From: Penicillus capitatus
Taxonomy: Eukaryota; Plantae; Chlorophyta
Length of the DNA stretch: 64,000 nt
Direction of reading: 5' to 3'
NCBI GenBank assembly: GCA_965649825.1
Contig: OZ287718.1
Coordinates: 120,796-184,795, forward strand
The stretch's first letter is position 1; each line of letters begins with the position of its first letter. Of the stretch, positions 11,974-61,660 are shown piece by piece. The notes below the pieces were generated by a model. It made no database searches and was not told the origin of the DNA. It worked only from the letters and a program-made list of their open reading frames with translations. Both the position numbers and the translations under genes were made by a program.

Positions 11974-14900
11974 TCAAAACATGATTTGGCAGTCTTCAAT
12001 AAAGAGATCCCCCAACGGGCCAGATCCAGGTCTAACGGCAAGTGCTCCCTTAGCCGCGTCGTTCACTATTTCAACACTCCAGTTCCATAAGTTGCACGTG
12101 GTATTGGTTCGCATCCAGTCAATGCCACGAAATCGGGCAGCAATAGCTCCAACTTGACAACCAAGGACATAATTTGACACGGCGGGTTGTTTGTGATACT
12201 CCCATCTTAACTTTCGCTCTGAGACACCAATTCCCAGTTTTTCATCTTCGGATAGACTGGCAAAGTCTTCTGTGGCAACGAAATGCGTAATGGGTGGGTA
12301 GTCCAGGATGTCCAAACTGGCTACCGAGGCATAGACACAGGAAAGTGCTGCTTCGGCTGGAGATAAGAAGACAGAATTGTCCAGTTCCAGAATCTCTTGC
12401 CGATAGACGGGATTGTTCATGTAATCACTCGTCAGATTCGTCAAGGCCGTGCCTGGGGGCAATGTCAGAAAGACGCGCATCTTCTCATACTTCTCAACAG
12501 AACGCAGTCTTCTGGCTAACTCCAAGGCAAATGCCACATTCATGGCCTTGGTGGTGGAATACGTCCGAATACCGGCATCCTGAAACAGAGAACCATCTCC
12601 ATCGGGATCTGTATGAACCTGTCCGTTCGCCGAATTGGAATCTCCAGGTCTTTGGATCGCAAGGTCGATAAGATCCTTTTCTTCCACATTGAAGGCGGAA
12701 CCTGAGGATTGGATAACAATCCGGCCAGACTGGAGATTCAGTCGGTTGTTCTGCAGCAGGAGCATTGTCAGGAAAAACTGACCAAGGTGTGTCACGCTCA
12801 CGGCCTTCGACACTCCAGCCATGTTACTTGACCATCCAGCTGATCCATTGTGCACAGCATTGAGAATTAAGATGTCCACTTTACCTGACTGGAATCCAAA
12901 GTGTGCAGAGATCGCTGCCGTCAGCTTCTTCACACTCTTGACATCGTCAAGAGCGACGGCGAAACATGTGAATGTTCCAACCTGTAATGGATTAAAGCGA
13001 CTGAAGATCTGAGTGATCGCTGCTACTCTCTCATTGCACGTGTCCGACGACTGAGATGTAGCAATGACATTGGCACCCAATCTGAGAAGATGGAGTGCAA
13101 CTGAGAATCCGATGCCGTTTGTCCCTCCTGTCAGCACCACGTTCTTTCCTTGCACTTGGTCGATTCTTCCTTCGTCGCTTATACGTGGCAGCGACCCATC
13201 CAGGTCTGGATCTGAGAACTGTGAGATAGAGATCTCAGAAGGTGTGATTGGAATAGCGGTGTTGAGTAACCAATCAGGACAGAGGTCACTCCTGTCGGAC
13301 TTCAAATCGTTACGTGTCAAACGAAAACCACTTGTCTCCAATCTATGCACTGCATTGTTGCTGTCTCCATGTCTTTCGTTCTCTGCCTTCTTCACTCCCA
13401 CCCGTTGAGCACTGTTGAAGATTTCCGAGTTTTTCAATCGACTCTTGATTTTTACAAGAGTCTTGTACGCTTCCTTCCCATAGTACTTATCTTCCCAGTC
13501 TTCCATACCAGAATAGGCATAATTAACATAGGAGCCAGTGCAGAAAGGACTCAGCGAGCGATAGGTATCTTCTGTCCATTTCTTCAAGGCATCCATCGTC
13601 ATGACATAATCATCGTTCGATGTCTTTTTCCTCTTCTTTTCCGGAACCATCATTGACGTGATGGACAGCATGGATACTGCATTACTATGCTTCCAGAGAG
13701 AAGGCCCTCTTCCGATATTACCCCCTAGGTGTTCCATCACAATATACACAGAGCTGTCGAATCCTTCGGGGATGAAATCAATTCCAGCATACCTAAGAAC
13801 AGAAAAGCTTATTGATCGGTGTTTCTGATTGCATGTGGACACTTGAATCGATCCAGCAAAACAAGAGAACGATTGTGTGACCACTCGTCTGTGATTCCAC
13901 TCGTCCAGTATACACGTGCATGGCGGATCCCGTACATATTGGACCATTCCGTGAATGTGTATCCTTGTCGAAATGGACCGCCTTTCAGTATCCAGTCTTG
14001 TGTATGTTTCTTGGCCTTTTCCATTTCGTCAGGACTCGAACAACGCAAGCTGAGTAAGCTGCAGCACAATAAAGAAGTCAGTGCTGTATTTTACGATCAT
14101 CCACCCAGCGTACGTGCATGCTGTTTCTGCACTCACGGCTCGCGCCGTTCGATTGAGAAAAGGCTGCAGAACATCGATCCCTTCTTCGATGGGTCCATCA
14201 AACATCAATCCAAACTCCACGCTCACCTAATCAGGTAAATAAATGCCCGTCGATCTTAATATTGTATGTGGGAATGCAAAATAACTCTGATATTTCCTGT
14301 GTGCCGATGTGGAAAGACTCTTCTGATAAAGAGGTCCATTGTCAAGCGAGGGTCGATATCAGCATCAAGGATGGTGTCTTGGTAGATATCAAGGAATTCT
14401 GCCGATGCGTCTGGTGACCTATGCAGACAAAGATGCATGGACACAGCCACCAATTAATATGTTAAGAGGATACTGGAAAAAAGCAATGTGGCCTGCTAGA
14501 TAAGACGGATAGGCAGGATATGTCCTGAGAATGACATCGGTGACGACACCAAAATTTGAACCACCAGCACCGCGGAGTGCCCACATCAATTCTGGATCAT
14601 TTGTATCATCCACGATAACGACCTCTCCATCTGGCAACACCATCCGAACAGACAGGACATTGTCCGAAACAAGTCCGCGATTGCGGGATGTCCATCCGAT
14701 GCCTCCTCCAAGGGCCAATCCAACAACTCCCACTAACGGACAACCACCCACCACAGCGGACAGACTTCTTTCCTCTAGCAAAGAAAGGACATCTTTCCAT
14801 AGAGACCCGCCTTGAGCCACAATAGCATTGGATGGAAATCTTGTCATCCACCGACGCTCGCATTCATCCAACGGTTTCTCGTCTGCGAAGTGTACCCCAT

Positions 14901-15444
14901 TGAAGTAGACCATGTCAATCACCATTCCACCCTCCGAAATGGAAAATCCAGCTGGATTGTGTCCTCCATTGCGCACCGTCACTGTCAAGTTCTGCTGTTT
15001 TGCCAGCTTAAGTGCCATTCGAATATCGTTTAGAGTGACAGGCATCATCACCATTTTTGGTTTAGCGGAGATGGCTAGATTGAATAGAGGATAGCGCGAG
15101 AGATACGATTCTGCACTTTGGGGACAGAGATAGGGACCCAGGAAATGACTGTTCAGATACCCAATGGCCTCTTCATCGAAACAGGGATCCTTCAAAGAGG
15201 ATGGAATCGAAATCTCCACCCATACAGTACAAAGTGGTCGTCCTCTGCCTCCCGGATCACTAAAGTCCAATGACTGCCTTGTAAATCCTTGTCAGCAAGC
15301 GACATCACACGTAGAAAGTGATGTGACCCTTCGCAAACCTATAAGCTCTTCGAGTGTTGAAGTAGGATAGATGGCGAACAAGAAGCATCCAACTAGAGTA
15401 ATGATCGACAGACAGAAGGTGACATAGAGCCGACGCGGATGCAT
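11974..15444 (-). CDS. Signal-anchored berberine-bridge-enzyme-like FAD oxidase fused to a short-chain dehydrogenase/reductase
   Basis: Exon 1 is MHPRRLYVTFCLSIITLVGCFLFAIY. FAD-binding motifs VRNGGHN, GGCPLVGVVG and ALRGAGGSNFGVVT; BBE C-terminus GSYVNY..W..KYYG..Y..L..IK. The same uninterrupted ORF continues into SDR motifs TGGTNGIG, ILILNA and YSTTK. Confidence 0.85.
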
Positions 15445-15580
15445 CTCAATGAAATGGATCAGCCGACCTGGCTTCCATGCAGCGCATACGACACGTGCTG
15501 TGGCTACGGTAGGTATGGTGTACGTACGGTCATGGCTCTGTCCATTGTCGCCGGATACCTTATTTCGACCGTCTCGTGAA

Positions 15581-17617
15581 ATGTTTTCCGCTCTATTCTC
15601 ACGGTCGCGCAGGCCGGGCTCTCAATCTCTGACGGATTTGCCTTCGGACTTTCTTCATCGCGTCTTCATCCATCTGGAGAGCGCGCGCGATGTCATATCT
15701 CTTCAGTCGACGTCCAAGCGCTTACTGGAGATTGGTCGCTCTCGAAGTGTATGGGCAAACAGACTGCGCAAAGAATACGGACTTCGACTTGAGGTAGAGA
15801 CGTCGTCGCTCTTCCAAGCACGTCGTCGGGAAGCCAATTTCAAATAGGTGGATTCTCGTTGCGACCACAATGCATTGCAAGATCTCTACAGAGATACCTT
15901 CAGGCAGAAGGACGCGCTGCGTTACTGGGGAGTCTACACCGATGGCGGCTGTGATAACTCTTGGCTGAACTACTGGGTGCGCTTGCTGTGGATGGTAGGA
16001 TGCATCTTGTGTTGAATGTGGGTGGATGCTGCAGATGGATAACATGTTTACTCCAAACCACTGGGAGTCATTCTGCAGCGAATTCGGGAAGAATGTGAAT
16101 TGTGTGGGTGTGATGGTAGAAGGAGAGCTGGAGAAGGATATTCGGAAAAGGGAAGAACGCAACTTCATGATACACAAATGTCGCATTCCGGCCAGTCGCG
16201 TTTTCAATGAGACATATCATCACACTGGCATCGAAGAGGCGGTGAGAAGGCTGCAGGCGTGGTCTCGACCAGAACTTGTGAATTTCATGATTGCACTCTG
16301 CAATGACATGGAAGCTGGTGGTATGTGGGGAGAATTGTTACTGCATGGAGTCCCAGAAGCAGAGAGAGATAGCGAAAAAGTGAGCAGTTGTGCTTCTGAA
16401 TTGATGGGACAGTTCAAGCAATCTCTGTTTTTCAGACTCGCCTCAGAGAATTTGTTCAGCAGCTGGACAATGAGAGAGATTTGAAAGTGGAATCGGTTGG
16501 AATAGAACAGTTCTTTGAGCATCCAGCGCAGAACTTCTCAAAGAGTGGGTGTCCGCTGCCATCACCGTGCATTCAACACAGCTGTCTCTACGACAAAGCA
16601 TACACAAATGCAGTCCGTCAACAACCGGAAGTTGATGTGACAGGTACACCGTTGCCAACACGGTATGCTCGGCTTTGACGAATTGGCTGTGCATCAGGTG
16701 TCATCGATTTCATAAGAGCATGCAGATTTGGACCGTTCAGCTGTCCTGTTGCCAGTGCTGTCCTTTTTGTAGGACAAGTGAATATGTCGCGTAATGCAGA
16801 GTCAGACAGTTCCATGGCAGATGCTCTCAAGGTAGAGAGAGCGACTGTGTGATGGTGGTATTCCTGGCATCGATCGGGTGTGTCTGATAGGAACTGTGCA
16901 CAAGTGCAGCATCTGAGTCCTTTGACGATCTCTTCCAGAAAGACATGGTTCAAGCAGCCATTGCTGACAAGACACTGCCCGCTATCTGCCAGCACAAGTC
17001 TAGTACTGTAGGTCACTGGGTTGAATTCAGTCGTGATTACACAGACAAAAAACTGGCAGAGAAATTCAGTCGACTGCAGCCTGTCGTTTGGTTCCACTTT
17101 TATTCCAAAGAAGAATTGCGGAATGGCGAGTTTGTTGCCGGAGACGACGACGACACAGATAACGAAGACAATGGGTTTGAGTCTATGGATTCCGATTCCG
17201 ATCACGGTTCCGTTGACAGTTTTCCATCGGAGATCCTGTCCGAAGACGAACACGTCGTCGAGGACTTGGAGAATGAAATCGTGCAGGATGTCCTGGAAGA
17301 TCTACCAGATCTTGTCGACGAAATAGATGGACATGTGGACCCACACCAACCTCCATCTGGCAAAGACACGTATGTCCCTGACATCACTCACTCACTCAAT
17401 TCTGCCATCCTGTGCTGTGCTCTGCAGATTGGAAATGCGATTGAGCTCAAGGGTAAGTGGCAATGTAGTACTGGTGAAATTGATTCATCCTGAGAATCTG
17501 ATGGAGGAATTCCGAGATCTCCATTCAGACCCAAACATAGATATCAACGCCATCCTTCTGAATGGGAAGAAGATCACATTGCCCGTGGGCACACGCTTTC
17601 TTTACAGCAACGATTGA
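15581..17617 (+). CDS. F-box protein with a C-terminal domain of unknown function and an acidic insert, multi-exon
   Basis: F-box LTDLPSDFLHRVFIHLESARDVISLQSTSKRL. Later exons read LRYWGVYTDGGCDNSWLNYW/VDNMF, RACRFGPFSCPVAS, PVVWFHF and VKLIHPENLMEEFRDLHSDPNIDI. Stop at 17615-17617. Confidence 0.75.
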
Positions 17618-32022: not shown

Positions 32023-32702
32023 GTCCAGATGATTTCATTATAGACGTTGTTTTTGTTTCGTCGGGCCAATCGTGAACACGTCTGGCAAACAGCATTCTGC
32101 CACTACCCCTGTTCGAATTCTTTCGGTCTTCTTGTCAGCATTCTGCCTGGCGATGGCGACGTCGATGATATGGATGGATAGCACAGTTTCTTTCAGACAT
32201 GTCTGTCCTCCTCCGTCCAAACTTGCACGGCTGTATCCAGTACATCAACCTCAGCACCATCCAAACTTGAGATCCTGCTTGAATTCTAAATGTGTAGATG
32301 AAGCAATACACCATCCGTCCTTCATTATAGATGCTGTTTCTGGTCACTGTGTTAGACAGCAACGATGGAGACGCTTCCCCGGCTTTCCTACAGCAAATGC
32401 GCGAGTAGAGGCACTGGATAACGGAAGATACTCAACGCTGAGTCTGTCTAGACAGTTCAGTTTCCGCGTCGGTTAGATGCATTACGTTAAAGATGTCCGG
32501 CAGATGAATTCTCCATCGTCGGTTTCCCCATTTTGATACGCTCCTGTACACTGAAATCCAGGTGGCCGACTTTCTTTGTACCTGCACGAAGACAGCGACG
32601 GGTATTAGAACAAACGAACTTCTGTAAGCCCAGGAGTGCGAGTGAGCTTTTGACGTTGTTTGAGTTTTGTTGGTTTCTTATTGGACGTCGAAGAACCTGA
32701 GC

Positions 32703-33920
32703 ATGGCTCCGCTACATATGTGCTACGTCCAGCCGTTTCCACGATACAATGCTCATGGCGTTGGGGTGCCGATATCTCCCCCAGACATGGCTGTTTACGG
32801 TCACTCACCCGTGGCATTTGATGGCTTGTCGCAAGCCGAATCGTTCAGCAGTTGGGAATCACCTCCGCCACAGCCCTATTACCCTACCGCAGCGCCGATG
32901 TACGAAGCTAGACCGAAAGGGCTGAATCCTGCGTGGGACATGGACAGCCTGAAAACGGCGCTTCAGAACGCCCGTCCCGGTATGAACGAGATACGCTACT
33001 ATCTCGAGACGTGTACGTTCAAGCCCCGAGAACAGGCATTCACGACGCTCGTGAATCAATGCAGTCGCCAGAGAGAGTGGCGCAAAGCCCTCGAAATTCT
33101 GGAAGCAATGAAGGGATTTCGGGGTCTGCGTCCGAATAAGTATACTTATTCGGCGGCCATTTCAGCCTGCAGCAATGCCGGAAAATGGGAAAAGGCATTG
33201 GAGGTCTTTAATGAGATGAAAGCTGTCTCTCAAAAGGACCCTGGTTGTTTGCCAAACTTGGTCACCTACAGCACTGTCATCACGGCGTGTGAGCGCGGCG
33301 GAAAATTTGATAAGGTTCTTGCCCTCTATGACGAAATGATCACGGAAAAAATATCTCCGGACAAGATCACCTTCGTCTCTGTTCTCGGAGCCTGTGTGCG
33401 GAGCAAGAACTGGAAGCGAGCTGAAGAAATTCTGGAAAGTATGCATGCAGACGGCCTTGCCGGAACGTCTCGTGTTTATACAAAGCTTCTGGAACACTAC
33501 GGCATTACAGCAGAGTGGCAAAAGGCCTTGGATCTGTTCCTGACCATGCAGATTCAGGGATCGTCCGTCGATCGCCAGACGTGCCGAGCGTTGATGTCAG
33601 CATTGGAAGCGGGCAAGAAATCGGATATGGCTGTCCAATTACTCGAAGCCATGAAGGAGGCAAAAATCACGGCAGATGCTCAGACATACAACTCTGCTCT
33701 GCGAACACTTGCTGCGTGCAGCGAATTGGACAAAGCCGTGGCAATGATGAATGAAATGGACGCACTGAAAATCAAAGTAACGTCGGAGACAGCGAACACG
33801 GTTCTGGTCTCCTGCGCTACGGCTAACAAGGTTACTCTGGGAAGGCAGTTGATGGGGAAATTTGCATCTCTGGGTCTGCCCGTCGATGGCAACACCATCG
33901 GCAACAAGAAATCTCATTAA
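32703..33920 (+). CDS. Pentatricopeptide repeat protein, paralog A (intronless)
   Basis: About 35-aa repeats such as PNKYTYSAAISACSNAGKWEKALEVFNEM and PNLVTYSTVITACERGGKFDKVLALYDEM, after a Pro/Ser/Tyr-rich leader. Confidence 0.9.
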   Translation: MAPLHMCYVQPFPRYNAHGVGVPISPPDMAVYGHSPVAFDGLSQAESFSSWESPPPQPYYPTAAPMYEARPKGLNPAWDMDSLKTALQNARPGMNEIRYYLETCTFKPREQAFTTLVNQCSRQREWRKALEILEAMKGFRGLRPNKYTYSAAISACSNAGKWEKALEVFNEMKAVSQKDPGCLPNLVTYSTVITACERGGKFDKVLALYDEMITEKISPDKITFVSVLGACVRSKNWKRAEEILESMHADGLAGTSRVYTKLLEHYGITAEWQKALDLFLTMQIQGSSVDRQTCRALMSALEAGKKSDMAVQLLEAMKEAKITADAQTYNSALRTLAACSELDKAVAMMNEMDALKIKVTSETANTVLVSCATANKVTLGRQLMGKFASLGLPVDGNTIGNKKSH

Positions 33921-38599: not shown

Positions 38600-39835
38600 A
38601 TGTCTGGCTCTCCTTGGGTTGCTTCATTAGACGCGAGTTCTGCCTATCCGGCAGTCTACCAGTCTAAGACGGCACCATTCGCGGTGCCATCTTTACAGCT
38701 CTCCGAAACGTTTTCGCCGTCGGACTACTCATACAGCTATGGAATGCCGACGTATCGCAGTATGGAATCGGGCGAGTATGCAAGTTCTTTGTACTCGTCA
38801 CCACGACCATCGCCGGTTGGATGCGCGGCGGACGTTGAAGAGCTGAAGATTGCCGTGCAACGAGCGCACTGCGGCACCGGAGAAGTCCAACGTGTAATTC
38901 ATTCTTGTCAGTTTCGTCCGAGAGAGCAAGCTTTCACTGCGTTGATCAACATGTGTGGCCGCATGAAGGACTGGCCAAAGGCGCTGGAAGTCTTCGACAG
39001 TATGCTGCAGTCGCCATATGTTAGACCAAACACATTCACATATACAGCCTTGATCTCAGCATGCAGCAATTCCGGAGAGCATCACATGGCATTGAGGTTG
39101 TTCGGTGACATGAAAATCGCAGCCAAGTCGTCGGCTGCCTGTAAACCGAACTTGGTGACGTACAGTGCAATCATTGCCTCTTGTGAAAAGGGAGATATGG
39201 CTGAATCTGCACTGGAACTCTGTGATGAGATGCTTGACGAAGGCATTGAACCTGACCGAGTCACTTACGTTTCAGTCCTCTCTGCATGTCAGACTCTTCG
39301 AAATTGGGACAAAGCTGAAGAGATTGTGAATCGCATGCACAGGGCCGGCCTTCCAGCGACTGTCAGCATTTACTATCAGTTGCTGATCCACTACGCCAAC
39401 AATAATGATTGGTCACAGGCTCTTGATCTCTTCCTCATCATGCAAATGCAAGGTCAGAACGCAAATCGAGATATGTGCCGGGCATTCATGAAGGCTCTTG
39501 AGAATGGTGGCCGCCACGACATGGCCTTACAGTTACTGGACTCAATGTGGGATGCCGGAATGGTGATTGACATTGAAACGTATAATTCTGCTCTTCGAGT
39601 CCTCGGAAGACATGGACAGTGGGAAAACGCATTGAGACTTCTGAAGGAAATCAAGTCTGCCCATTTGAAGATGAATCTGGAAACTGCCAACTCTGTATTG
39701 ACTGCGGCCATTCGGGGAGAGCAAGATCACTTAGTACAGAAGCTGATGGAGAATTTCTCTCTCTGTGGTCTCAGACCTGATCTCGCGAAGATAAAAGCAA
39801 GAATAATCGAACAAGACGAGATCTTGAGACAATAA
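38600..39835 (+). CDS. Pentatricopeptide repeat protein, paralog B (intronless)
   Basis: PNTFTYTALISACSNSG, PNLVTYSAIIASCEKG and PDRVTYVSVLSAC; same architecture as paralog A. Confidence 0.9.
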   Translation: MSGSPWVASLDASSAYPAVYQSKTAPFAVPSLQLSETFSPSDYSYSYGMPTYRSMESGEYASSLYSSPRPSPVGCAADVEELKIAVQRAHCGTGEVQRVIHSCQFRPREQAFTALINMCGRMKDWPKALEVFDSMLQSPYVRPNTFTYTALISACSNSGEHHMALRLFGDMKIAAKSSAACKPNLVTYSAIIASCEKGDMAESALELCDEMLDEGIEPDRVTYVSVLSACQTLRNWDKAEEIVNRMHRAGLPATVSIYYQLLIHYANNNDWSQALDLFLIMQMQGQNANRDMCRAFMKALENGGRHDMALQLLDSMWDAGMVIDIETYNSALRVLGRHGQWENALRLLKEIKSAHLKMNLETANSVLTAAIRGEQDHLVQKLMENFSLCGLRPDLAKIKARIIEQDEILRQ

Positions 39836-44529: not shown

Positions 44530-45772
44530 ATGGAGAATGCAATGCCATTCGTTTGTGGACAATACTGCCTGTCTGCGCCTCGGCCATACGCATTGTACCC
44601 ATATTCCATCCTGGCGATATCACAGGGTTCAGGCGACCATTGCCATTCCGCCGGAGACATGGGTCGGCCGACGAGTCGCAGTTCGACGAAAGAGAATCTC
44701 AGCAGTCCGTCCGCCTGGGTAAGGAGCCCGACGTTTGAAAATCGGAGAGGACTTCAGGCGCCATTCGACATGGATACTCTCAAGGCGATGATTCAAGCGG
44801 CACGGCCGGACTGCGGAGAAGTACGCAAAGCCATTCTTTCGTGTACATTCAAGCCCCGAGAAAGAGCATTCACGCGTTTGATAAATATGTGTGGTCGACA
44901 AAAGGAATCGCGAAAAGCGATGGAAGTGTTTGCAACTATGCGAGAGTGTCGTGGTTTGCGACCAAACACTTACACATATTCGGCACTCATCTCCGCTTGC
45001 AGCAACTCCGGCGACTGGGACTCAGCTGTTGACGTATTTCACCGAATGAAACAGGCTGCTGTCAGTGATCCAGGATGTCGTCCTAATCAAGTAAGGGCCT
45101 GTTCTTACACAAGATCGTCCTTCAGCAATCTGTTGATCTTGCTAGGTGACATACAACGCCATCATTGCTGCCAGTGAACGCGGAGGTCGATATGACGTTT
45201 GTTTGGCATGTTTTCAAGACATGGTTGATAGCGATGCCTTACCAGACAGTGTAGCATATTGCTCGGCAATAAATGCCTGTCAAAAAATGGGACAATGGAG
45301 AGAGGCGGAGAGAATTCTTTCAGACATGCATGAGCGGGAATTCGTTGCTAGTGTCGGGGTCTATGCTTCAATGATCGAGCACTATGCGACGTATTCCTGC
45401 TGGGAGTCTGCTTTGGATTTGTTTATGACGATGCAGGTGCTGGGACAGACTGTCGACGTTCGTTGTTGTGAGGGACTAATGATGGCATTCGTCTCAGGCC
45501 AGAAACCAGAAATGGCCTATCATCTTCTCGAATCCATGCGGACGAATGATATCCAGATCAACACATCAACGTTTTCAGCTGCGTTACGCATCATCACGGC
45601 TGCTTCACGATGGGAATTGGCATACGATCTCGTCACTGCTCTCCATGACAATGGCAAGGACATTGCACTGGAGACGGTGTTGCCTGTTATCCAGTCTATG
45701 AAGTTGGCGGGGAAACAAGAGATGGCCACGGGACTGGAAACCATCGTTAAGCAGTTAAACACCGATAGTTAG
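44530..45772 (+). CDS. Pentatricopeptide repeat protein, paralog C (one intron, about 45091-45144)
   Basis: FKPRERAFTRLINMCG, PNTYTYSALISACSNSG, DPGCRPNQ/VTYNAIIAASERGG. Confidence 0.88.
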
Positions 45773-53549: not shown

Positions 53550-55869
53550 CGTCTCAAAAGCTGGACTGCTCGACTCTAACTCCGTCCTCAGAAAGCTACG
53601 ACACCGAAGAACGACTTCAAAAACACGGACCGTGTTAAGAACAATAACCGTAAGAATGCACAGAACTCGTTCCTAGACCAGAGGCAGCCACGTGTCGCAC
53701 GAAGAGATCTTAGTCATCCAATGATGCGACATCGAAGGCGGACAAACCATTCGCCGTCACAGATCGACAAACAGGACGCGCCCTTTTGAAAATGATCTAT
53801 AGGAGGTAAGGGTATTTAACAACATTCCAGCCGACATGCGAAGCCTCCTGGTGCGGTCACGTGCTCAAGTCCTCGACGCCACATCAGGTGAAACTGGTCG
53901 TGTCAGTACAATATCGAAGACACTCTTGCGCGCGGCGGATCGTTTCGAGCACCCAACGTCGCGTCAGGTGTAACGCGTGCTGTCTGTCAGCGACTCGCAG
54001 AAGTGCTCTATGACGCCGGCGACACGGTCGAGCGAGGGTGGGAATGTGTCGGCGGGGTCGAGTGGATGCTGTAGGACCCTTGGTTGGAGCCCGACGGCGG
54101 CGTCCTCGGGCTGTGGCGCGGCCTTTCCGGATTCGACATTTCGGCACACTGCGGCCGACGGCGGGCCCACCGTCGGCAGTCTTCGACGCAGACGGGTGCG
54201 GGACGGCTCGGGACACGCCGCGGATGCCAATCGGTGGAGGCTCGTTTGGCTCTGGGCGGTGTCGTACGGAGTTGAAATCGTGGCGGTTACGTCGCATCAG
54301 GTGTAACCTGGCCTGTCAGTACGATCTGGAAGTGCACGACGACGCCGGCGACACGGTCGAGCGAGGGCGGGGATGTGTCGGCGGGGTCGAGTGGATGCCG
54401 ACGGACCCTTGGTTGGAGCCCGGCGGCGGCGTGCTCGGGCTGTGGCGCGGCCTTTCCGGATTCGACATTTCGGCACACTGCGGCCCACGGAGGGCCCACC
54501 GTCGGCAGTCTTCGACGCAGACGGGTGCGGGACGCCTCGGGACACGCCGCGGATGCCGATCGGTGGAGGCTCGTTTGGCTCTGGGCGGTGTCGTACGGGG
54601 TTGAAATCGTGGCCGTTACGTCGCATCAGGTGTAACCTGGCCTGTCAGTGACTCGCAGAAGTGCACGACGACGCCGGCGACACGGTCGAGCGAGGGCGGG
54701 GATGTGTCGGCGGGGTCGAGTGGATGCGGACGGACCCTTGGTTGGAGCCCGACGGCGGCGTCCTCGGGCTGTGGCGCGGCCTTTCCGGATTCGACATTTC
54801 GGCACACTGCGGCCGACGGCGGGCCCACCGTCGGCAGTCTTCGACGCAGACGGGTGCGGGACGCCTCGGGACACACCGCGGATGCCGATCGGTGGAGGCT
54901 CGTTTGGCTCTGGGCGGTGTCGTACGGAGTTGAAATCGTGGCGGTTACGTCGCATCAGGTGTAACCTGGCCTGTCAGTACGATCTGGAAGTGCACGACGA
55001 CGCCGGCGACACGGTCGAGCGAGGGCGGGGATGTGTCGGCGGGGTCGAGTGGATGCCGACGGACCCTTGGTTGGAGCCCGGCGGCGGCGTGCTCGGGCTG
55101 TGGCGCGGCCTTTCCGGATTCGACATTTCGGCACACTGCGGCCCACGGAGGGCCCACCGTCGGCAGTCTTCGACGCAGACGGGTGCGGGACGCCTCGGGA
55201 CACGCCGCGGATGCCGATCGGTGGAGGCTCGTTTGGCTTTGGGCGGTGTCGTACTTGGTTGAAATCGTGGCGGTTACGTCGCATCAGGTGTAACCTGGCC
55301 TGTCAGTACGATCTGGAAGTGCACGACGACGCCGGCGACACGGTCGAGCGAGGGCGGGGATGGGTCGGCGGGGACGAGTGGATGCCGACGGACCCTTGGT
55401 TGGAGCCCGACGGCGGCGTCCTCGGGCCGTGGCGCGGCCTTTCCGGATTCGACATTTCGGCACACTGCGGCCGACGGCGGGCCCACCGTCGGCAGTCTTC
55501 GACGCAGACGGGTGCGGGACGCCTCGGGACACGCCGCGGATGCCGATCGGTGGAGGCTCGTTTGGCTCTGGGCGGTGTCGTACTTGGTTGAAATCGTGGC
55601 GGTTACGTCGCATCAGGTGTAACCTGGCCTGTCAGTACGATCTGGAAGTGCACGACGACGCCGGCGACACGGTCGAGCGAGGGCGGGGATGGGTCGGCGG
55701 GGTCGAGTGGATGCCGACGGACCCTTGGTTGGAGCCCGACGGCGGCGTCCTCGGGCCGTGGCGCGGCCTTTCCGGATTCGACATTTCGGCACACTGCGGC
55801 CGACGGCGGGCCCACCGTCGGCAGTCTTCGACGCAGACGGGTGCGGGACGCCTCGGGACACACCGCGGA

Positions 55870-58800
55870 TGCCAATCGGTGGAGGCTCGTTTGGCTTTGG
55901 GCGGTGTCGTACGGGGTTGAAATCGTGGCGGTTACGTCGCATCAGGTGTAACCTGGCCTGTCAGTGACTCGCAGAAGTGCACGACGACGCCGGCGACACG
56001 GTCGAGCGAGGGCGGGGATGTGTCGGCGGGGTCGAGTGGATGCGGACGGACCCTTGGTTGGAGCCCGACGGCGGCGTCCTCGGGCTGTGGCGCGGCCTTT
56101 CCGGATTCGACATTTCGGCACACTGCGGCCGACGGCGGGCCCACCGTCGGCAGTCTTCGACGCAGACGGGTGCGGGACGCCTCGGGACACACCGCGGATG
56201 CCGATCGGTGCAAGCTCGTTTGGCTTTGGGCGGTGTCGTACTTGGTTGAAATCGTGGCGGTTACGTCGCATCAGGTGTAACCTGGCCTGTCAGTACGATC
56301 TGGAAGTGCACGACGACGCCGGCGACACGGTCGAGCGAGGGCGGGGATGTGTCGGCGGGGTCGAGTGGATGCCGACGGACCCTTGGTTGGAGCCCGGCGG
56401 CGGCGTGCTCGGGCTGTGGCGCGGCCTTTCCGGATTCGACATTTCGGCACACTGCGGCCGACGGAGGGCCCACCGTCGGCAGTCTTCGACGCAGACGGGT
56501 GCGGGACGCCTCGGGACACGTCGCGGATGCCGATCGGTGGAGGCTCGTTTGGCTCTGGGCGGTGTCGTACGGAGTTGAAATCGTGGCGGTTACGTCGCAT
56601 CAGGTGTAACCTGGCCTGTCAGTACGATCTGGAAGTGCACGACGACGCCGGCGACACGGTCGAGCGAGGGCGGGGATGTGTCGGCGGGGACGAGTGGATG
56701 CTGACGGACCCTTGGTTGGAGCCCGACGGCGGCGTGCTCGGGCTGTGGCGCGGCCTTTCCGGATTCGACATTTCGGCACACTGCGGCCGACGGAGGGCCC
56801 ACCGTCGGCAGTCTTCGACGCAGACGGGTGCGGGACGGCTCGGGACACGCCGCGGATGCCAATCGGTGGAGGCTCGTTTGGCTCTGGGCGGTGTCGTACG
56901 GAGTTGAAATCGTGGCCGTTACGTCGCATCAGGTGTAACCTGGCCTGTCAGTACGATCTGGAAGTGCACGACGACGCCGGCGACACGGTCGAGCGAGGGT
57001 GGGGATGTGTCGGCGGGGACGAGTGGATGCTGTAGGACCCTTGGTTGGCGACCGACGGCGGCGTCCTCGGGCTGTGGCGCGGCCTTTCCGGATTCGACAT
57101 TTCGGCACACTGCGGCCGACGGCGGGCCCACCGTCGGCAGTCTTCGACGCAGACGGGTGCGGGACGCCTCGGGACACGCCGCGGATGCCAATCGGTGGAG
57201 GCTCGTTTGGCTTTGGGCGGTGTCGTACGGAGTTGAAATCGTGGCGGTTACGTCGCATCAGGTGTAACCTGGCCTGTCAGTACGATCTGGAAGTGCACGA
57301 CGACGCCGGCGACACGGTCGAGCGAGGCCGGGGATGTGTCGGCGGGGTCGAGTGGATGCCGACGGACCCTTGGTTGGAGCCCGGCGGCGGCGTGCTCGGG
57401 CTGTGGCGCGGCCTTTCCGGATTCGACATTTCGGCACACTGCGGCCCACGGAGGGCCGACCGTCGGCAGTCTTCGACGCAGACGGGTGCGGGACGCCTCG
57501 GGACACGCCGCGGATGCCGATCGGTGGAGGCTCGTTTGGCTCTGGGCGGTGTCGTACGGAGTTGAAATCGTGGCGGTTACGTCGCATCAGGTGTAACCTG
57601 GCCTGTCAGTACGATCTGGAAGTGCACGACGACGCCGGCGACACGGTCGAGCGAGGGCGGGGATGGGTCGGCGGGGTCGAGTGGATGCCGACGGACCCTT
57701 GGTTGGAGCCCGACGGCGGCGTCCTCGGGCCGTGGCGCGGCCTTTCCGGATTCGACATTTCGGCACACTGCGGCCGACGGAGGGCCCACCGTCGGCAGTC
57801 TTCGACGCAGACGGGTGCGGGACGCCTCGGGACACGCCGCGGATGCCAATCGGTGGAGGCTCGTTTGGCTCTGGGCGGTGTCGTACGGGGTTGAAATCGT
57901 GGCGGTTACGTCGCATCAGGTGTAACCTGGCCTGTCAGTGACTCGCAGAAGTGCACGACGACGCCGGCGACACGGTCGAGCGAGGGCGGGGATGTGTCGG
58001 CGGGGTCGAGTGGATGCGGACGGACCCTTGGTTGGAGCCCGACGGCGGCGTCCTCGGGCTGTGGCGCGGCCTTTCCGGATTCGACATTTCGGCACACTGC
58101 GGCCGACGGCGGGCCCACCGTCGGCAGTCTTCGACGCAGACGGGTGCGGGACGCCTCGGGACACGCCGCGGATGCCAATCGGTGGAGGCTCGTTTGGCTC
58201 TGGGCGGTGTCGTACTTGGTTGAAATCGTGGCCGTTACGTCGCATCAGGTGTAACCTGGCCTGTCAGTACGATCTGGAAGTGCACGACGACGCCGGCGAC
58301 ACGGTCGAGCGAGGGTGGGGATGTGTCGGCGGGGTCGAGTGGATGCCGACGGACCCTTGGTTGGAGCCCGACGGCGGCGTCCTCGGGCCGTGGCGCGGCC
58401 TTTCCGGATTCGACATTTCGGCACACTGCGGCCGACGGCGGGCCCACCGTCGGCAGTCTTCGACGCAGACGGGTGCGGGACGCCTCGGGACACGCCGCGG
58501 ATGCCAATCGGTGGAGGCTCGTTTGGCTTTGGGCGGTGTCGTACGGGGTTGAAATCGTGGCGGTTACGTCGCATCAGGTGTAACCTGGCCTGTCAGTGAC
58601 TCGCAGAAGTGCACGACGACGCCGGCGACACGGTCGAGCGAGGGCGGGGATGTGTCGGCGGGGTCGAGTGGATGCGGACGGACCCTTGGTTGGAGCCCGA
58701 CGGCGGCGTCCTCGGGCTGTGGCGCGGCCTTTCCGGATTCGACATTTCGGCACACTGCGGCCGACGGCGGGCCCACCGTCGGCAGTCTTCGACGCAGACG

Positions 58801-61660
58801 GGTGCGGGACGCCTCGGGACACACCGCGGATGCCGATCGGTGCAAGCTCGTTTGGCTTTGGGCGGTGTCGTACTTGGTTGAAATCGTGGCGGTTACGTCG
58901 CATCAGGTGTAACCTGGCCTGTCAGTACGATCTGGAAGTGCACGACGACGCCGGCGACACGGTCGAGCGAGGGCGGGGATGTGTCGGCGGGGTCGAGTGG
59001 ATGCCGACGGACCCTTGGTTGGAGCCCGGCGGCGGCGTGCTCGGGCTGTGGCGCGGCCTTTCCGGATTCGACATTTCGGCACACTGCGGCCGACGGAGGG
59101 CCCACCGTCGGCAGTCTTCGACGCAGACGGGTGCGGGACGCCTCGGGACACGTCGCGGATGCCGATCGGTGGAGGCTCGTTTGGCTCTGGGCGGTGTCGT
59201 ACGGAGTTGAAATCGTGGCGGTTACGTCGCATCAGGTGTAACCTGGCCTGTCAGTACGATCTGGAAGTGCACGACGACGCCGGCGACACGGTCGAGCGAG
59301 GGCGGGGATGTGTCGGCGGGGACGAGTGGATGCTGACGGACCCTTGGTTGGAGCCCGACGGCGGCGTGCTCGGGCTGTGGCGCGGCCTTTCCGGATTCGA
59401 CATTTCGGCACACTGCGGCCGACGGAGGGCCCACCGTCGGCAGTCTTCGACGCAGACGGGTGCGGGACGGCTCGGGACACGCCGCGGATGCCAATCGGTG
59501 GAGGCTCGTTTGGCTCTGGGCGGTGTCGTACGGAGTTGAAATCGTGGCCGTTACGTCGCATCAGGTGTAACCTGGCCTGTCAGTACGATCTGGAAGTGCA
59601 CGACGACGCCGGCGACACGGTCGAGCGAGGGTGGGGATGTGTCGGCGGGGACGAGTGGATGCTGTAGGACCCTTGGTTGGCGACCGACGGCGGCGTCCTC
59701 GGGCTGTGGCGCGGCCTTTCCGGATTCGACATTTCGGCACACTGCGGCCGACGGCGGGCCCACCGTCGGCAGTCTTCGACGCAGACGGGTGCGGGACGCC
59801 TCGGGACACGCCGCGGATGCCAATCGGTGGAGGCTCGTTTGGCTTTGGGCGGTGTCGTACGGAGTTGAAATCGTGGCGGTTACGTCGCATCAGGTGTAAC
59901 CTGGCCTGTCAGTACGATCTGGAAGTGCACGACGACGCCGGCGACACGGTCGAGCGAGGCCGGGGATGTGTCGGCGGGGTCGAGTGGATGCCGACGGACC
60001 CTTGGTTGGAGCCCGGCGGCGGCGTGCTCGGGCTGTGGCGCGGCCTTTCCGGATTCGACATTTCGGCACACTGCGGCCCACGGAGGGCCGACCGTCGGCA
60101 GTCTTCGACGCAGACGGGTGCGGGACGCCTCGGGACACGCCGCGGATGCCGATCGGTGGAGGCTCGTTTGGCTCTGGGCGGTGTCGTACGGAGTTGAAAT
60201 CGTGGCGGTTACGTCGCATCAGGTGTAACCTGGCCTGTCAGTACGATCTGGAAGTGCACGACGACGCCGGCGACACGGTCGAGCGAGGGCGGGGATGGGT
60301 CGGCGGGGTCGAGTGGATGCCGACGGACCCTTGGTTGGAGCCCGACGGCGGCGTCCTCGGGCCGTGGCGCGGCCTTTCCGGATTCGACATTTCGGCACAC
60401 TGCGGCCGACGGAGGGCCCACCGTCGGCAGTCTTCGACGCAGACGGGTGCGGGACGCCTCGGGACACGCCGCGGATGCCAATCGGTGGAGGCTCGTTTGG
60501 CTCTGGGCGGTGTCGTACGGGGTTGAAATCGTGGCGGTTACGTCGCATCAGGTGTAACCTGGCCTGTCAGTGACTCGCAGAAGTGCACGACGACGCCGGC
60601 GACACGGTCGAGCGAGGGCGGGGATGTGTCGGCGGGGTCGAGTGGATGCGGACGGACCCTTGGTTGGAGCCCGACGGCGGCGTCCTCGGGCTGTGGCGCG
60701 GCCTTTCCGGATTCGACATTTCGGCACACTGCGGCCGACGGCGGGCCCACCGTCGGCAGTCTTCGACGCAGACGGGTGCGGGACGCCTCGGGACACGCCG
60801 CGGATGCCAATCGGTGGAGGCTCGTTTGGCTCTGGGCGGTGTCGTACTTGGTTGAAATCGTGGCCGTTACGTCGCATCAGGTGTAACCTGGCCTGTCAGT
60901 ACGATCTGGAAGTGCACGACGACGCCGGCGACACGGTCGAGCGAGGGTGGGGATGTGTCGGCGGGGTCGAGTGGATGCCGACGGACCCTTGGTTGGAGCC
61001 CGACGGCGGCGTCCTCGGGCCGTGGCGCGGCCTTTCCGGATTCGACATTTCGGCACACTGCGGCCGACGGCGGGCCCACCGTCGGCAGTCTTCGACGCAG
61101 ACGGGTGCGGGACGCCTCGGGACACGCCGCGGATGCCAATCGGTGGAGGCTCGTTTGGCTTTGGGCGGTGTCGTACGGGGTTGAAATCGTGGCGGTTACG
61201 TCGCATCAGGTGTAACCTGGCCTGTCAGTGACTCGCAGAAGTGCACGACGACGCCGGCGACACGGTCGAGCGAGGGCGGGGATGTGTCGGCGGGGTCGAG
61301 TGGATGCGGACGGACCCTTGGTTGGAGCCCGACGGCGGCGTCCTCGGGCTGTGGCGCGGCCTTTCCGGATTCGACATTTCGGCACACTGCGGCCGACGGC
61401 GGGCCCACCGTCGGCAGTCTTCGACGCAGACGGGTGCGGGACGCCTCGGGACACACCGCGGATGCCGATCGGTGCAAGCTCGTTTGGCTTTGGGCGGTGT
61501 CGTACTTGGTTGAAATCGTGGCGGTTACGTCGCATCAGGTGTAACCTGGCCTGTCAGTACGATCTGGAAGTGCACGACGACGCCGGCGACACGGTCGAGC
61601 GAGGGCGGGGATGTGTCGGCGGGGTCGAGTGGATGCCGACGGACCCTTGGTTGGAGCCCG
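55870..61660. repeat. Higher-order repeat of 8 monomers (2632 bp), about 2.2 copies
   Basis: Diagnostic variants recur at exactly 2632 bp. For example, gtgcaagctc occurs at about 56210, 58842 and 61474, and identical ORFs start at 56020/58652/61284 and 57007/59639. Confidence 0.93.

What the first reader, a model, noticed from the sequence alone, without database searches (positions are those of the whole stretch)
11974..15444. Bicovalent-FAD BBE-like oxidase fused in-frame to an NAD(P)-dependent SDR
Seen: the BBE C-terminal motif and the SDR Rossmann motif lie in one stop-free, intron-free stretch with a linker of about 90 codons (about 13400-13130), so the fusion is not a splicing guess. 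The His (RNGGH) and Cys (GGCPLVG) ligands typical of bicovalent FAD are present, SDR YxxxK is intact, and there is an N-terminal signal anchor. Known: BBE-like enzymes oxidise sugars, alcohols or alkaloids and make H2O2. Inference: a two-step oxidase/reductase acting on one substrate, possibly in specialised-metabolite or wound chemistry. I do not recall this fusion in a signal-anchored form.
Basis: partly seen in the sequence, partly recalled or inferred. Interest (0 to 1): 0.75.

Follow-up and report, generated by a model that had tools for sequence, protein, structure and literature searches.

The report
Algal flavin oxidase fused to SDR reductase
This green-alga gene really does encode one membrane-anchored protein joining a flavin-dependent (BBE-like) oxidase to an NAD(P)-dependent short-chain reductase; the same fusion occurs in a few marine algae, has never been studied, and probably oxidises and then re-reduces a single substrate.

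Summary
On the minus strand, 15444-11974 is a six-exon gene with five GT-AG introns of 50-59 nt. [quoted passage not shown] BBE, linker and SDR all lie in one exon.

The fusion is not an assembly or annotation artefact:
- A sister contig has the identical exon structure, with dN/dS 0.18 overall and 0.20 in the linker.
- A Caulerpa-like contig carries it as one intronless 1018-codon ORF.
- Full-length homologues occur in Caulerpa lentillifera, Bryopsis, two Tetraselmis species (including transcriptome contigs), the haptophyte Diacronema and a diplonemid transcriptome.

The residues expected to matter are invariant in all eight full-length proteins: His145, Cys218, oxygen-gate Gly216/Val221, the SDR glycine motif and Tyr872/Lys876.

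The architecture is rare and none of the named database entries recovered carries a functional name. No paper on it was found. Substrate and function are not shown. My best reading is a type II-anchored, lumen-facing enzyme that oxidises a C-OH or C-N with O2 and reduces the product with NAD(P)H, possibly inverting a stereocentre, as the separate pairs DprE1/DprE2 and BBOX/BBR do. The wound-chemistry idea is untested.

Verdict: a new variant of known enzyme kinds, of moderate interest.

The parts
11974..15444 (-). Whole coding region of the fusion gene (ATG 15444 to stop 11974-11976), 1066 aa after splicing
   Evidence: Gene model. It is colinear with full-length homologues. The model transfers exactly to the sister contig L001.
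15339..15444 (-). Exon 1: start codon, basic MHPRR, hydrophobic signal-anchor (aa 6-26 = 15429-15367)
   Evidence: The structure model gives a helix at residues 2-25. The N-terminal segment is conserved with Caulerpa, and a hydrophobic N-terminal stretch is present in every full-length homologue.
14474..15287 (-). Exon 2: FAD_binding_4 domain (15060-14614). Contains His145 in RNGGH (14961-14959), Cys218 in GGCPLVG (14742-14740), oxygen-gate Gly216/Val221 (Val 14733-14731) and conserved Cys71/Cys90.
   Evidence: Pfam E=8e-25. Invariant columns in alignment A1. Coordinates.
14286..14418 (-). Exon 3 (substrate-binding part of the BBE-like fold)
   Evidence: Matches Caulerpa residues about 298-329.
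14114..14226 (-). Exon 4
13843..14058 (-). Exon 5
11974..13792 (-). Exon 6: a single uninterrupted exon holding the end of the BBE-like fold, the BBE motif, the linker, the whole SDR and the stop codon
   Evidence: The equivalent single ORFs are seen in P0002, P0003 and P0007.
13405..13533 (-). BBE C-terminal domain, including Y-V-N-Y (aa 549-552, 13530-13519)
   Evidence: Pfam PF08031 E=1.7e-6. Tyr552 is invariant. The Y/FxN motif is described in PMC11375781.
13147..13404 (-). Inter-domain linker (86 codons). Mostly predicted disordered, but contains the conserved motif LCPDW (aa 631-635, 13284-13270).
   Evidence: pLDDT is below 50 at residues 596-619 and 642-672. The CP-x-W motif is present in 6 of 8 proteins, with Bryopsis keeping only the CP and Namystynia gapped at this position. 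Linker dN/dS is 0.20.
12295..13146 (-). SDR domain. Contains TGGTNGIG (13131-13108), Thr795 in place of the tetrad Asn (12792-12790), Ser824 (12705-12703), Tyr872 and Lys876 (12561-12547), and a roughly 33-residue insert between Ser and Tyr.
   Evidence: Pfam adh_short E=2.4e-14. Best NCBIfam matches are PRK06196/PRK06197, far below their cut-offs. Closest solved structure is 11-beta-HSD1, E=1e-10. Invariant Gly683/687/689, Tyr872 and Lys876.
11977..12294 (-). C-terminal extension of the SDR with conserved cysteines (GCQ..., TTCNLWNW). Part is predicted disordered.
   Evidence: dN/dS is 0.15.

Best explanation
This is a genuine single gene of a siphonous green alga (order Bryopsidales; closest to Caulerpa among the named relatives recovered). 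It encodes a type II membrane-anchored, lumen- or exterior-facing bifunctional redox enzyme.

Proposed mechanism:
1. The N-terminal domain is a BBE-like flavoprotein oxidase that probably carries FAD bound to both His145 and Cys218. It has an oxygen-permissive gate (Gly216/Val221). It would remove a hydride from a C-OH (or C-N) of the substrate and pass the electrons to O2, making H2O2.
2. The fused C-terminal SDR has an intact glycine motif and Ser-Tyr-Lys, with no acidic residue after strand beta-2, so NADP(H) is likely. It would then reduce the carbonyl or imine just formed.
3. The pair would therefore process one substrate in two steps. The most likely net result is stereo-inversion (epimerisation or deracemisation) or redox isomerisation.

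How firm each step is:
- Shown here: gene structure, domain order, conservation and invariant residues.
- Inferred: covalent flavin attachment, O2 use, topology, cofactor preference, coupling of the two reactions, and the substrate, which is unknown.

My sub-confidences: real conserved fusion 0.95; both domains catalytically competent 0.75; sequential action on one substrate 0.55; net epimerisation 0.3.
For: Fusion is real:
- The gene model is colinear with full-length homologues.
- Sister contig L001 has the same six exons, all introns GT-AG and no indel in any exon.
- dN/dS is 0.18 overall, 0.20 in the linker and 0.12 in the SDR.
- L002 carries the gene as one intronless 1018-codon ORF.
- The same three-domain architecture is found in Bryopsis, Caulerpa, Tetraselmis (MMETSP transcripts), Diacronema and Namystynia.
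- Pairwise identity matrices of the two halves correlate at r=0.94, which fits a single ancient fusion.

Competence of the domains:
- His145, Cys218, Gly216, Val221, Gly683/687/689, Tyr872 and Lys876 are invariant in all eight proteins.
- The predicted oxidase half has the complete BBE-like fold (Foldseek to EncM, target TM-score 0.82).

Oxygen gate:
- Valine at the gate position gives fast O2 reaction, leucine slow (PMC4513132).
- The EcBBE G164A variant is a dehydrogenase (PDB 4pzf title).

Topology:
- MHPRR followed by a 20-residue hydrophobic helix.
- Invariant cysteines in both halves and seven N-x-S/T sites.
- The closest solved SDR is 11-beta-HSD1. From background knowledge, that enzyme is itself an ER-lumen SDR with an N-terminal anchor.

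Precedent for oxidase-then-SDR chemistry:
- BBOX (BBE-like) plus BBR (an atypical SDR) epimerise bisbenzylisoquinolines (bioRxiv 10.64898/2026.05.22.726869).
- BeklD/BeklG has been postulated to do the same (PMC11375781).
- DprE1 (FAD oxidase) plus DprE2 (NADH reductase) epimerise decaprenylphosphoryl-ribose (PMC4366402, PMC11127046).
Against: - No substrate, transcript or protein data exist for this organism.
- Unfused oxidase-only paralogues exist in Ostreobium and Bryopsis with no SDR within 6 kb, so the oxidase can work alone.
- In the window protein and its sister, the SDR tetrad Asn is Thr (VTHLG); most homologues keep Asn. The NNAG motif is degenerate (LNAV).
- The SDR is very divergent: 54 bits against a 414-bit cut-off for the best NCBIfam model.
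- Supply of NAD(P)H in an algal secretory lumen is unproven.
- The structure model has pTM 0.50 and a disordered linker, so it says nothing about channelling between the two active sites.
- The closest bacterial relatives of the oxidase half lack the Cys, so bicovalent attachment is predicted from the motif alone.
Confidence: 0.5

Rival explanations
1. The two domains catalyse different steps of one pathway without stereo-inversion. For example, both act oxidatively: the flavoprotein oxidises one hydroxyl and the SDR, using NAD(P)+, oxidises another. Alternatively the SDR supplies the alcohol that the oxidase consumes. Either route would build a dicarbonyl, lactone or quinone-type specialised metabolite or a modified cell-wall sugar.
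For: SDRs are reversible. BBE-like enzymes often work within multi-step oxidative pathways, including double oxidations (review PMC11375781). Fusions of neighbouring pathway enzymes are common. The conservation data fit this reading as well as the main one.
Against: No neighbouring biosynthetic genes are visible; the neighbours are MCM8, an F-box protein and DHAR. The documented BBE-like plus SDR pairs work as oxidation followed by reduction.
Confidence: 0.25
2. The pair is a self-contained NAD(P)H-driven hydrogen-peroxide generator. The SDR reduces a small carbonyl mediator with NAD(P)H and the oxidase re-oxidises it with O2. The net reaction is NAD(P)H + O2 -> H2O2, for example for wound-plug cross-linking or defence.
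For: An oxidase-type gate (Gly216/Val221) is invariant. The topology appears to face the lumen or exterior.
Against: The family also occurs in unicellular Tetraselmis and in a haptophyte, which make no wound plugs. There is no precedent for such a cycle. NAD(P)H would have to be supplied outside the cytosol.
Confidence: 0.08
3. The SDR half is catalytically dead or purely structural or regulatory (for example a nucleotide-sensing or oligomerisation module), and only the oxidase works.
For: The tetrad Asn is replaced by Thr here. NNAG is degenerate. There is a large insert between Ser and Tyr. The SDR is far below every curated family cut-off. Oxidase-only paralogues exist.
Against: The glycine motif, Tyr872 and Lys876 are invariant across lineages as far apart as chlorophytes, a haptophyte and a diplonemid transcriptome, and the catalytic Ser is kept in 7 of 8. 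The SDR has the lowest dN/dS of the whole gene, 0.12.
Confidence: 0.12

Closest known systems
BBE-like flavoprotein oxidases (VAO/PCMH superfamily; Pfam FAD_binding_4 + BBE). Closest solved structures: EncM, 6-hydroxy-D-nicotine oxidase, Physcomitrella PpBBE-like 1.
   Same: Both Pfam domains are present. The predicted fold is complete (target TM-score 0.82 to EncM, 0.77-0.78 to PpBBE1 and 6HDNO). The RxGGH histidine, GxCxxVG cysteine and Y-x-N-Y motifs are present, and the oxygen gate is the valine type.
   Different: - It carries a C-terminal SDR and an N-terminal membrane anchor.
- Identity to any solved member is only 16-23% by structural alignment.
- By sequence it sits nearest the bacterial EncM/6HDNO-like group, whose closest members lack the Cys, yet it has the bicovalent-type Cys.
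- Its substrate is unknown.
Classical SDRs of the PRK06196/PRK06197 group (which I take, from background knowledge, to be the retinol-dehydrogenase/WWOX-like group) and 11-beta-hydroxysteroid dehydrogenase 1
   Same: Rossmann TGxxxGxG motif, Ser-Tyr-Lys, and an extended Ser-to-Tyr spacing as in the PRK06196/7 group. From background knowledge, 11-beta-HSD1 likewise faces the ER lumen behind an N-terminal anchor.
   Different: It is far below the family cut-offs (54 versus 414 bits). There is an extra insert of about 33 residues before the Tyr. Asn is replaced by Thr in this species. It has a roughly 100-residue cysteine-containing C-terminal extension. No free-standing close relative was found; all close SDR hits are parts of the same fusion family.
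Two-protein oxidase/reductase epimerisation modules: DprE1/DprE2 (mycobacterial arabinan precursor), BBOX/BBR (bisbenzylisoquinolines), BeklD/BeklG (berkeleylactones, postulated)
   Same: A flavin oxidase of the VAO superfamily makes a keto or imine intermediate, which an NAD(P)H-dependent SDR reduces to the other stereoisomer. The domain logic matches the order of domains here.
   Different: Those are separate polypeptides. From background knowledge, DprE1 has an ALO-type rather than a BBE-type C-terminus and non-covalent FAD. No sequence-level orthology to any of them was found. Whether the algal protein inverts a stereocentre is untested.
STORR / reticuline epimerase (P450 fused to an aldo-keto reductase in poppy)
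   Same: A natural fusion of an oxidising and a reducing enzyme that together epimerise one substrate. It is mentioned as 'fused epimerization enzymes' in bioRxiv 10.64898/2026.05.22.726869.
   Different: The protein families are entirely different (P450 and AKR), so this is an analogy of logic only.
Independent fusion P0155 (FAD_binding_4 + BBE + Cupin_2 + adh_short, 893 aa, metagenomic)
   Same: A BBE-like oxidase followed by an SDR in one polypeptide.
   Different: A cupin lies between the two domains. The SDR is a canonical one (140 bits to adh_short). No N-terminal anchor is evident in the sequence. It probably arose separately, and it is also uncharacterised.

Membership tests
BBE-like flavoprotein oxidases | FAD_binding_4 (PCMH-type) domain | tested here: met
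   PF01565 E=8e-25, 87.5 bits against a cut-off of 26.4.
BBE-like flavoprotein oxidases | C-terminal BBE domain with the Y/FxN motif | tested here: met
   PF08031 28.4 bits against a cut-off of 20.6. Y549-V-N551-Y552 is present and Tyr552 is invariant. The motif is described in PMC11375781.
BBE-like flavoprotein oxidases | Overall VAO/BBE fold (FAD domain plus substrate domain) | tested here: met
   The AlphaFold2 model has domain cores at pLDDT about 80-90. Foldseek gives target TM-scores of 0.82 to EncM and 0.71-0.78 to BBE, AtBBE15, PpBBE1 and 6HDNO.
BBE-like flavoprotein oxidases | His and Cys residues positioned for bicovalent FAD attachment | tested here: met
   RNGGH145 and GGC218PLVG are invariant in 8 of 8 fusion proteins. 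The register C-P-x-V-G...GGG matches the EcBBE Cys166 motif by pattern. I did not make a direct residue-by-residue alignment to EcBBE.
BBE-like flavoprotein oxidases | FAD actually covalently bound; oxidase turnover with O2 | not testable with these tools
   Needs purified protein (flavin fluorescence after denaturation, mass spectrometry, an H2O2 assay).
Classical short-chain dehydrogenases/reductases | N-terminal TGxxxGxG dinucleotide-binding motif | tested here: met
   T682-GGTNGIG. Gly683, Gly687 and Gly689 are invariant. PF00106 53.7 bits against a cut-off of 26.6.
Classical short-chain dehydrogenases/reductases | Catalytic Ser-Tyr-Lys (YxxxK) | tested here: met
   Ser824, Tyr872 and Lys876. 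Tyr and Lys are invariant; Ser is kept in 7 of 8.
Classical short-chain dehydrogenases/reductases | Fourth tetrad residue Asn and the NNAG motif | tested here: not met
   The window has Thr795 (VTHLG) where Caulerpa and Bryopsis have Asn. NNAG is LNAV. The deviation is real, but many active SDRs tolerate it.
Classical short-chain dehydrogenases/reductases | Membership of a named, curated SDR subfamily | tested here: not met
   The best NCBIfam models, PRK06196 and PRK06197, score 54 bits against cut-offs of 414 and 268. The closest PDB entry is 11-beta-HSD1, at only E=1e-10 over the N-terminal two-thirds.
Oxidase/reductase epimerase modules (DprE1/DprE2 type) | VAO-superfamily FAD oxidase paired with an NAD(P)H-dependent SDR | tested here: met
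   The domain composition matches; here the two are in one chain.
Oxidase/reductase epimerase modules (DprE1/DprE2 type) | Sequence orthology to DprE1 (ALO-type C-terminus) or DprE2 | tested here: not met
   The C-terminus is BBE-type, not ALO-type. No DprE1 or DprE2 appears among the listed PDB or NCBIfam matches.
Oxidase/reductase epimerase modules (DprE1/DprE2 type) | Keto or imine intermediate handed from oxidase to reductase, with net inversion | not testable with these tools
   Needs the substrate to be identified and the product stereochemistry determined.

The most novel reading that the evidence does not exclude
The protein is a natural, self-contained 'one-chain epimerase' of the secretory pathway. 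It would be anchored in the ER or Golgi membrane and would invert a hydroxyl-bearing stereocentre by O2-driven oxidation followed by NADPH-driven reduction. The target would be a lumenal substrate such as a cell-wall or scale sugar residue, or a secreted metabolite. That route to epimerisation has not been described in eukaryotic secretory compartments. The family would be shared by marine algae from several distant lineages.
Probability: 0.2. Interest if true: 0.7.

Novelty: new variant of a known kind. Interest (0 to 1): 0.45.

Why it matters
BBE-like oxidases and SDRs are each well known. Pairs of them have only recently been shown to carry out redox-mediated stereochemical editing as separate proteins. 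A conserved natural fusion of the two has several consequences:
- It implies that the two reactions are coupled, which narrows the search for the substrate.
- It would give enzymologists a ready-made single-chain oxidation-reduction catalyst, with deracemisation as a possible application.
- It marks a lineage-restricted piece of algal secretory-pathway biochemistry, seen in Bryopsidales, Tetraselmis and a pavlovophyte, that none of the named database entries recovered describes.
- The predicted need for NAD(P)H on the lumenal side raises a testable question about cofactor supply in algal endomembranes.

Tried and rejected
- Artefact hypothesis (two genes joined): rejected on conservation of the open frame in independent assemblies, an intronless homologue, transcriptome contigs and dN/dS.
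- Hidden SDR next to the 'unfused' Ostreobium and Bryopsis paralogues: tblastn of the SDR half against 6 kb of flank found nothing, so those are truly oxidase-only.
- Literature: three searches on the fusion architecture itself, out of six searches in all. No paper found describes a FAD_binding_4-BBE-SDR fusion or this algal family; only separate-protein pairs turned up.
- Sample accessions (SRR2835676, SRR33785046, ERZ26696514): not found in any searchable paper. Placement in Bryopsidales rests on the fusion protein and the neighbouring DHAR being closest to Caulerpa lentillifera, then Ostreobium.
- Rfam and tRNA scans of the window: nothing found, so no rRNA was available for taxonomy.
- Curated family assignment of the SDR (NCBIfam): only far-sub-threshold matches, so there is no functional name to borrow.
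- Structure model: it was hoped to show domain packing or a channel. With pTM 0.50 and a disordered linker, the relative orientation is not interpretable. No PDB chain covers both halves (best query TM-score 0.37).
- Gene neighbourhood as a functional clue: the neighbours (MCM8, F-box, DHAR/GST, PPR proteins) are housekeeping-type and uninformative.
- Wound chemistry specifically: considered but not adopted, because the family also occurs in non-siphonous unicells.
Full report
**1. What is in the sequence**

On the minus strand the region holds two large ORFs (15270-14419 and 13947-11974) separated by stop-containing stretches. Pfam finds three domains:
- FAD_binding_4 in the first ORF (E=8e-25).
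- BBE (E=1.7e-6) and adh_short (E=2.4e-14) together in the second ORF.

Using full-length homologues as guides and enumerating GT/AG pairs that keep the frame open, I obtained a six-exon model: 15444-15339, 15287-14474, 14418-14286, 14226-14114, 14058-13843 and 13792-11974. The five introns are 51, 55, 59, 55 and 50 nt, all GT-AG. The protein is 1066 aa.

The ATG at 15444 is the first in the open frame; there is an in-frame stop 60 codons upstream. BBE motif, linker, SDR and stop codon share the last exon. The gap between the two Pfam matches is 86 codons (13404-13147).

**2. Is the fusion real?**

Yes. Several independent lines agree.
- A sister contig (L001, from another ENA assembly) takes the model over exactly. 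It has six exons of identical length, all introns GT-AG, and an intron length change (59 to 47 nt) with no exon indel.
- Nei-Gojobori dN/dS between the two is 0.18 overall. By region it is 0.22 for the oxidase, 0.20 for the linker, 0.12 for the SDR core and 0.15 for the C-terminal extension. The linker is therefore coding sequence under constraint.
- A more distant relative (L003, 43-48% identity) has the FAD part upstream on the same strand, with BBE and SDR again in one ORF.
- Contig L002 carries the whole protein as one intronless 1018-codon ORF, colinear from residue 1 to 1062 of the window protein.
- An exhaustive HMMER search of 1.84 billion cluster representatives, Pfam scans and cluster look-ups recover the same FAD_binding_4-BBE-adh_short architecture in:
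  - Caulerpa lentillifera (1016 aa);
  - Bryopsis sp. KO-2023 (GMH38605.1, 1077 aa, 'hypothetical protein');
  - Tetraselmis astigmatica (MMETSP transcriptome contigs, 1071-1076 aa);
  - Tetraselmis striata (1113-1140 aa);
  - the haptophyte Diacronema lutheri (879-901 aa);
  - a Trinity transcript assigned to the diplonemid Namystynia karyoxenos (891 aa).

The transcriptome contigs show that homologues are transcribed as one message. Pairwise identity matrices of the two halves correlate at r=0.94, which fits one ancient fusion inherited as a unit.

**3. Organism and setting**

The window is part of a 943-kb contig of a metagenome-style ENA assembly, ERZ25074695. The gene calls stored for it split this eukaryotic gene into fragments.

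The fusion protein is closest to the Caulerpa versions (41-42%), then Bryopsis (33%). The neighbouring dehydroascorbate-reductase ORF is 60% identical to Caulerpa lentillifera and 46-49% to Ostreobium. The source is therefore a bryopsidalean (siphonous) green alga, closest to Caulerpa among the named relatives recovered.

Neighbours are MCM8, an F-box gene transcribed divergently, DHAR/GST and PPR genes. There is no biosynthetic cluster.

**4. The oxidase half**

Sequence search of the PDB puts it nearest EncM (E=5e-34) and 6-hydroxy-D-nicotine oxidase. Next come carbohydrate oxidases, PpBBE-like 1, BBE and the cannabinoid synthases. The AlphaFold2 model built on the eight-sequence alignment has mean pLDDT 69, with domain cores at 80-90. 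Its oxidase half superposes on EncM with a target TM-score of 0.82 and on the other BBE-like enzymes at 0.65-0.78.

Invariant in all eight fusion proteins are:
- His145 (RxGGH);
- Cys218 with Gly216 and Val221 (GGCPxVG);
- Tyr552 of the Y-x-N-Y motif.

In EcBBE the flavin is tethered to His104 and Cys166 (PMC11375781). The residue three positions after the Cys is the oxygen gatekeeper: valine gives fast O2 reaction, and leucine suppresses it about 400-fold (PMC4513132). Mutating the glycine two positions before the Cys turns BBE into a dehydrogenase (PDB 4pzf title). By motif register the algal protein is therefore of the bicovalent, oxygen-reactive type.

That register is an inference from the pattern. 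I did not make a residue-level alignment to EcBBE.

The nearest non-algal relatives are bacterial (Kribbella, Streptomyces, metagenomes; 27-30% identity). They have VSHTG in place of GCPxVG. The Cys is thus a feature of the algal family rather than of its closest bacterial relatives.

**5. The SDR half**

It has TGGTNGIG, Ser824 and Tyr872-x3-Lys876. The glycines, Tyr and Lys are invariant, and the Ser is kept in 7 of 8. It deviates in several ways:
- The tetrad Asn is Thr in this species and its sister, but Asn in Caulerpa and Bryopsis.
- NNAG reads LNAV.
- The Ser-Tyr spacing is 48 residues. From background knowledge about 13-14 is usual.
- There is a cysteine-containing C-terminal extension of about 100 residues.

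The best curated models are PRK06196 and PRK06197, far below their cut-offs. The best solved relative is 11-beta-HSD1 at E=1e-10.

Most homologues have Arg after strand beta-2; here it is Gln, and none has an acidic residue there. By the usual SDR rules (background knowledge) this points to NADP(H).

No free-standing close relative of this SDR turned up. Every close hit is part of the same fusion family, or a fragment ORF from a contig that also carries an FAD-domain fragment of the family.

**6. Anchor, linker, topology**

Residues 6-26 are the only membrane-grade hydrophobic segment outside the FAD-domain core. The model makes residues 2-25 a helix, preceded by MHPRR. Every family member starts with such a segment, the unfused paralogues included.

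The positive-inside rule (background knowledge) predicts a type II orientation with both catalytic domains lumenal or extracellular. Three observations fit that:
- Cys71, Cys90, Cys713 and Cys737 are invariant.
- There are seven N-x-S/T sequons.
- From background knowledge, eukaryotic BBE-like enzymes generally follow the secretory route.

The linker is mostly low-confidence in the model (residues 596-619 and 642-672). It does contain a conserved CP-x-W element (LCPDW, residues 631-635), present in 6 of 8 sequences, with Bryopsis keeping only the CP and Namystynia gapped there. Inter-domain geometry is not interpretable at pTM 0.50.

**7. How it most likely works**

Shown: one polypeptide, with both catalytic residue sets conserved and under purifying selection.

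Inferred: the oxidase removes a hydride from a C-OH or C-N and passes the electrons to O2, and the SDR reduces the resulting carbonyl or imine with NAD(P)H.

This two-step logic is documented for separate proteins:
- BBOX (BBE-like) plus BBR (an atypical SDR) invert C1 of bisbenzylisoquinolines (bioRxiv 10.64898/2026.05.22.726869).
- BeklD/BeklG has been proposed for berkeleylactones (PMC11375781).
- DprE1/DprE2 convert decaprenylphosphoryl-ribose to -arabinose (PMC4366402, PMC11127046).

Poppy reticuline epimerase is a fused example made from unrelated families.

I therefore favour a coupled oxidation-reduction on one substrate (about 0.55), with net epimerisation as the most specific version (about 0.3). 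Three rivals remain:
- Adjacent but non-inverting pathway steps.
- An NAD(P)H-driven H2O2 generator working through a cycled mediator.
- A non-catalytic SDR.

The last is disfavoured because the SDR has the lowest dN/dS in the gene.

Oxidase-only paralogues in Ostreobium and Bryopsis have no SDR within 6 kb. The oxidase can therefore stand alone, which weakens any claim of obligatory coupling.

**8. Comparison, novelty, verdict**

The protein passes the sequence and fold tests for BBE-like oxidases and the core tests for classical SDRs. It fails the Asn/NNAG detail and belongs to no curated SDR subfamily. It works like the DprE1/DprE2-type modules but is not a member of them.

The architecture is rare. 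About ten clusters at 50% identity among the top hits from 1.84 billion representatives carry it. One further fusion contains a cupin and probably arose separately (P0155).

None of the named database entries recovered gives a function, and no PDB chain covers both halves. No paper on the architecture was found in the three searches aimed at it.

The family's presence in Tetraselmis and a haptophyte makes that suggestion less likely.

I rate it a new variant of known kinds, interest about 0.45.

Noticed in passing
window 54000-63997: A tandem satellite with a 329-bp unit, 30.4 copies and 95% matches. GC is about 0.68 against about 0.47 elsewhere, with a strong G-over-C skew (+0.17). It runs off the end of the window. 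The many 186-204-aa 'ORFs' listed there are artefacts of the repeat.
   Followed up: partly
window 15449-15847 (+): An F-box-like ORF is transcribed divergently from the fusion gene, and the two start regions lie almost back to back. The same arrangement (GST/DHAR - F-box - fusion gene - MCM8) is kept in sister contig L001, and GST is also upstream in L003.
   Followed up: partly
window 32667-33920, 38600-39835, 44530-45772 (+): Three paralogous ORFs that look like pentatricopeptide-repeat (PPR) proteins share a conserved N-terminal motif ('...CTFKPREQAFT.LIN.CGR...'). This looks like a local tandem family. No domain search was run on them.
   Followed up: no
P0175 (Namystynia karyoxenos transcriptome, EukProt EP01062): A full fusion homologue (891 aa) is assigned to a heterotrophic diplonemid. 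It lacks the CP-x-W linker motif. This could be real, a horizontal transfer, or prey or contaminant RNA.
   Followed up: no
P0015-P0049 (bacterial relatives of the oxidase half): The closest bacterial homologues (27-30% identity) have VSHTG where the algal family has GCPxVG. They are the monocovalent EncM type. The algal family combines an EncM/6HDNO-like sequence background with the bicovalent-type cysteine, and a bacterial origin for the oxidase half is possible.
   Followed up: partly
L006 6001-13642 (Ostreobium quekettii) and L007 6001-10813 (Bryopsis sp. KO-2023): Oxidase-only paralogues with the same N-terminal anchor but no SDR within 6 kb. Bryopsis has both a fused and an unfused copy.
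   Followed up: yes
window 12792-12790 (Thr795): The fourth residue of the SDR catalytic tetrad (Asn) is Thr in this species and its sister contig. It is Asn in L003, Caulerpa and Bryopsis, so this is a recent lineage-specific substitution.
   Followed up: partly
L005 (ERZ26696514 ctg303557) versus L001 (ERZ26696514 ctg303805): The assembly that holds L001 contains a second contig with a near-identical copy of the gene (same 90%-identity protein cluster). It may be a haplotype or a recent duplicate.
   Followed up: no
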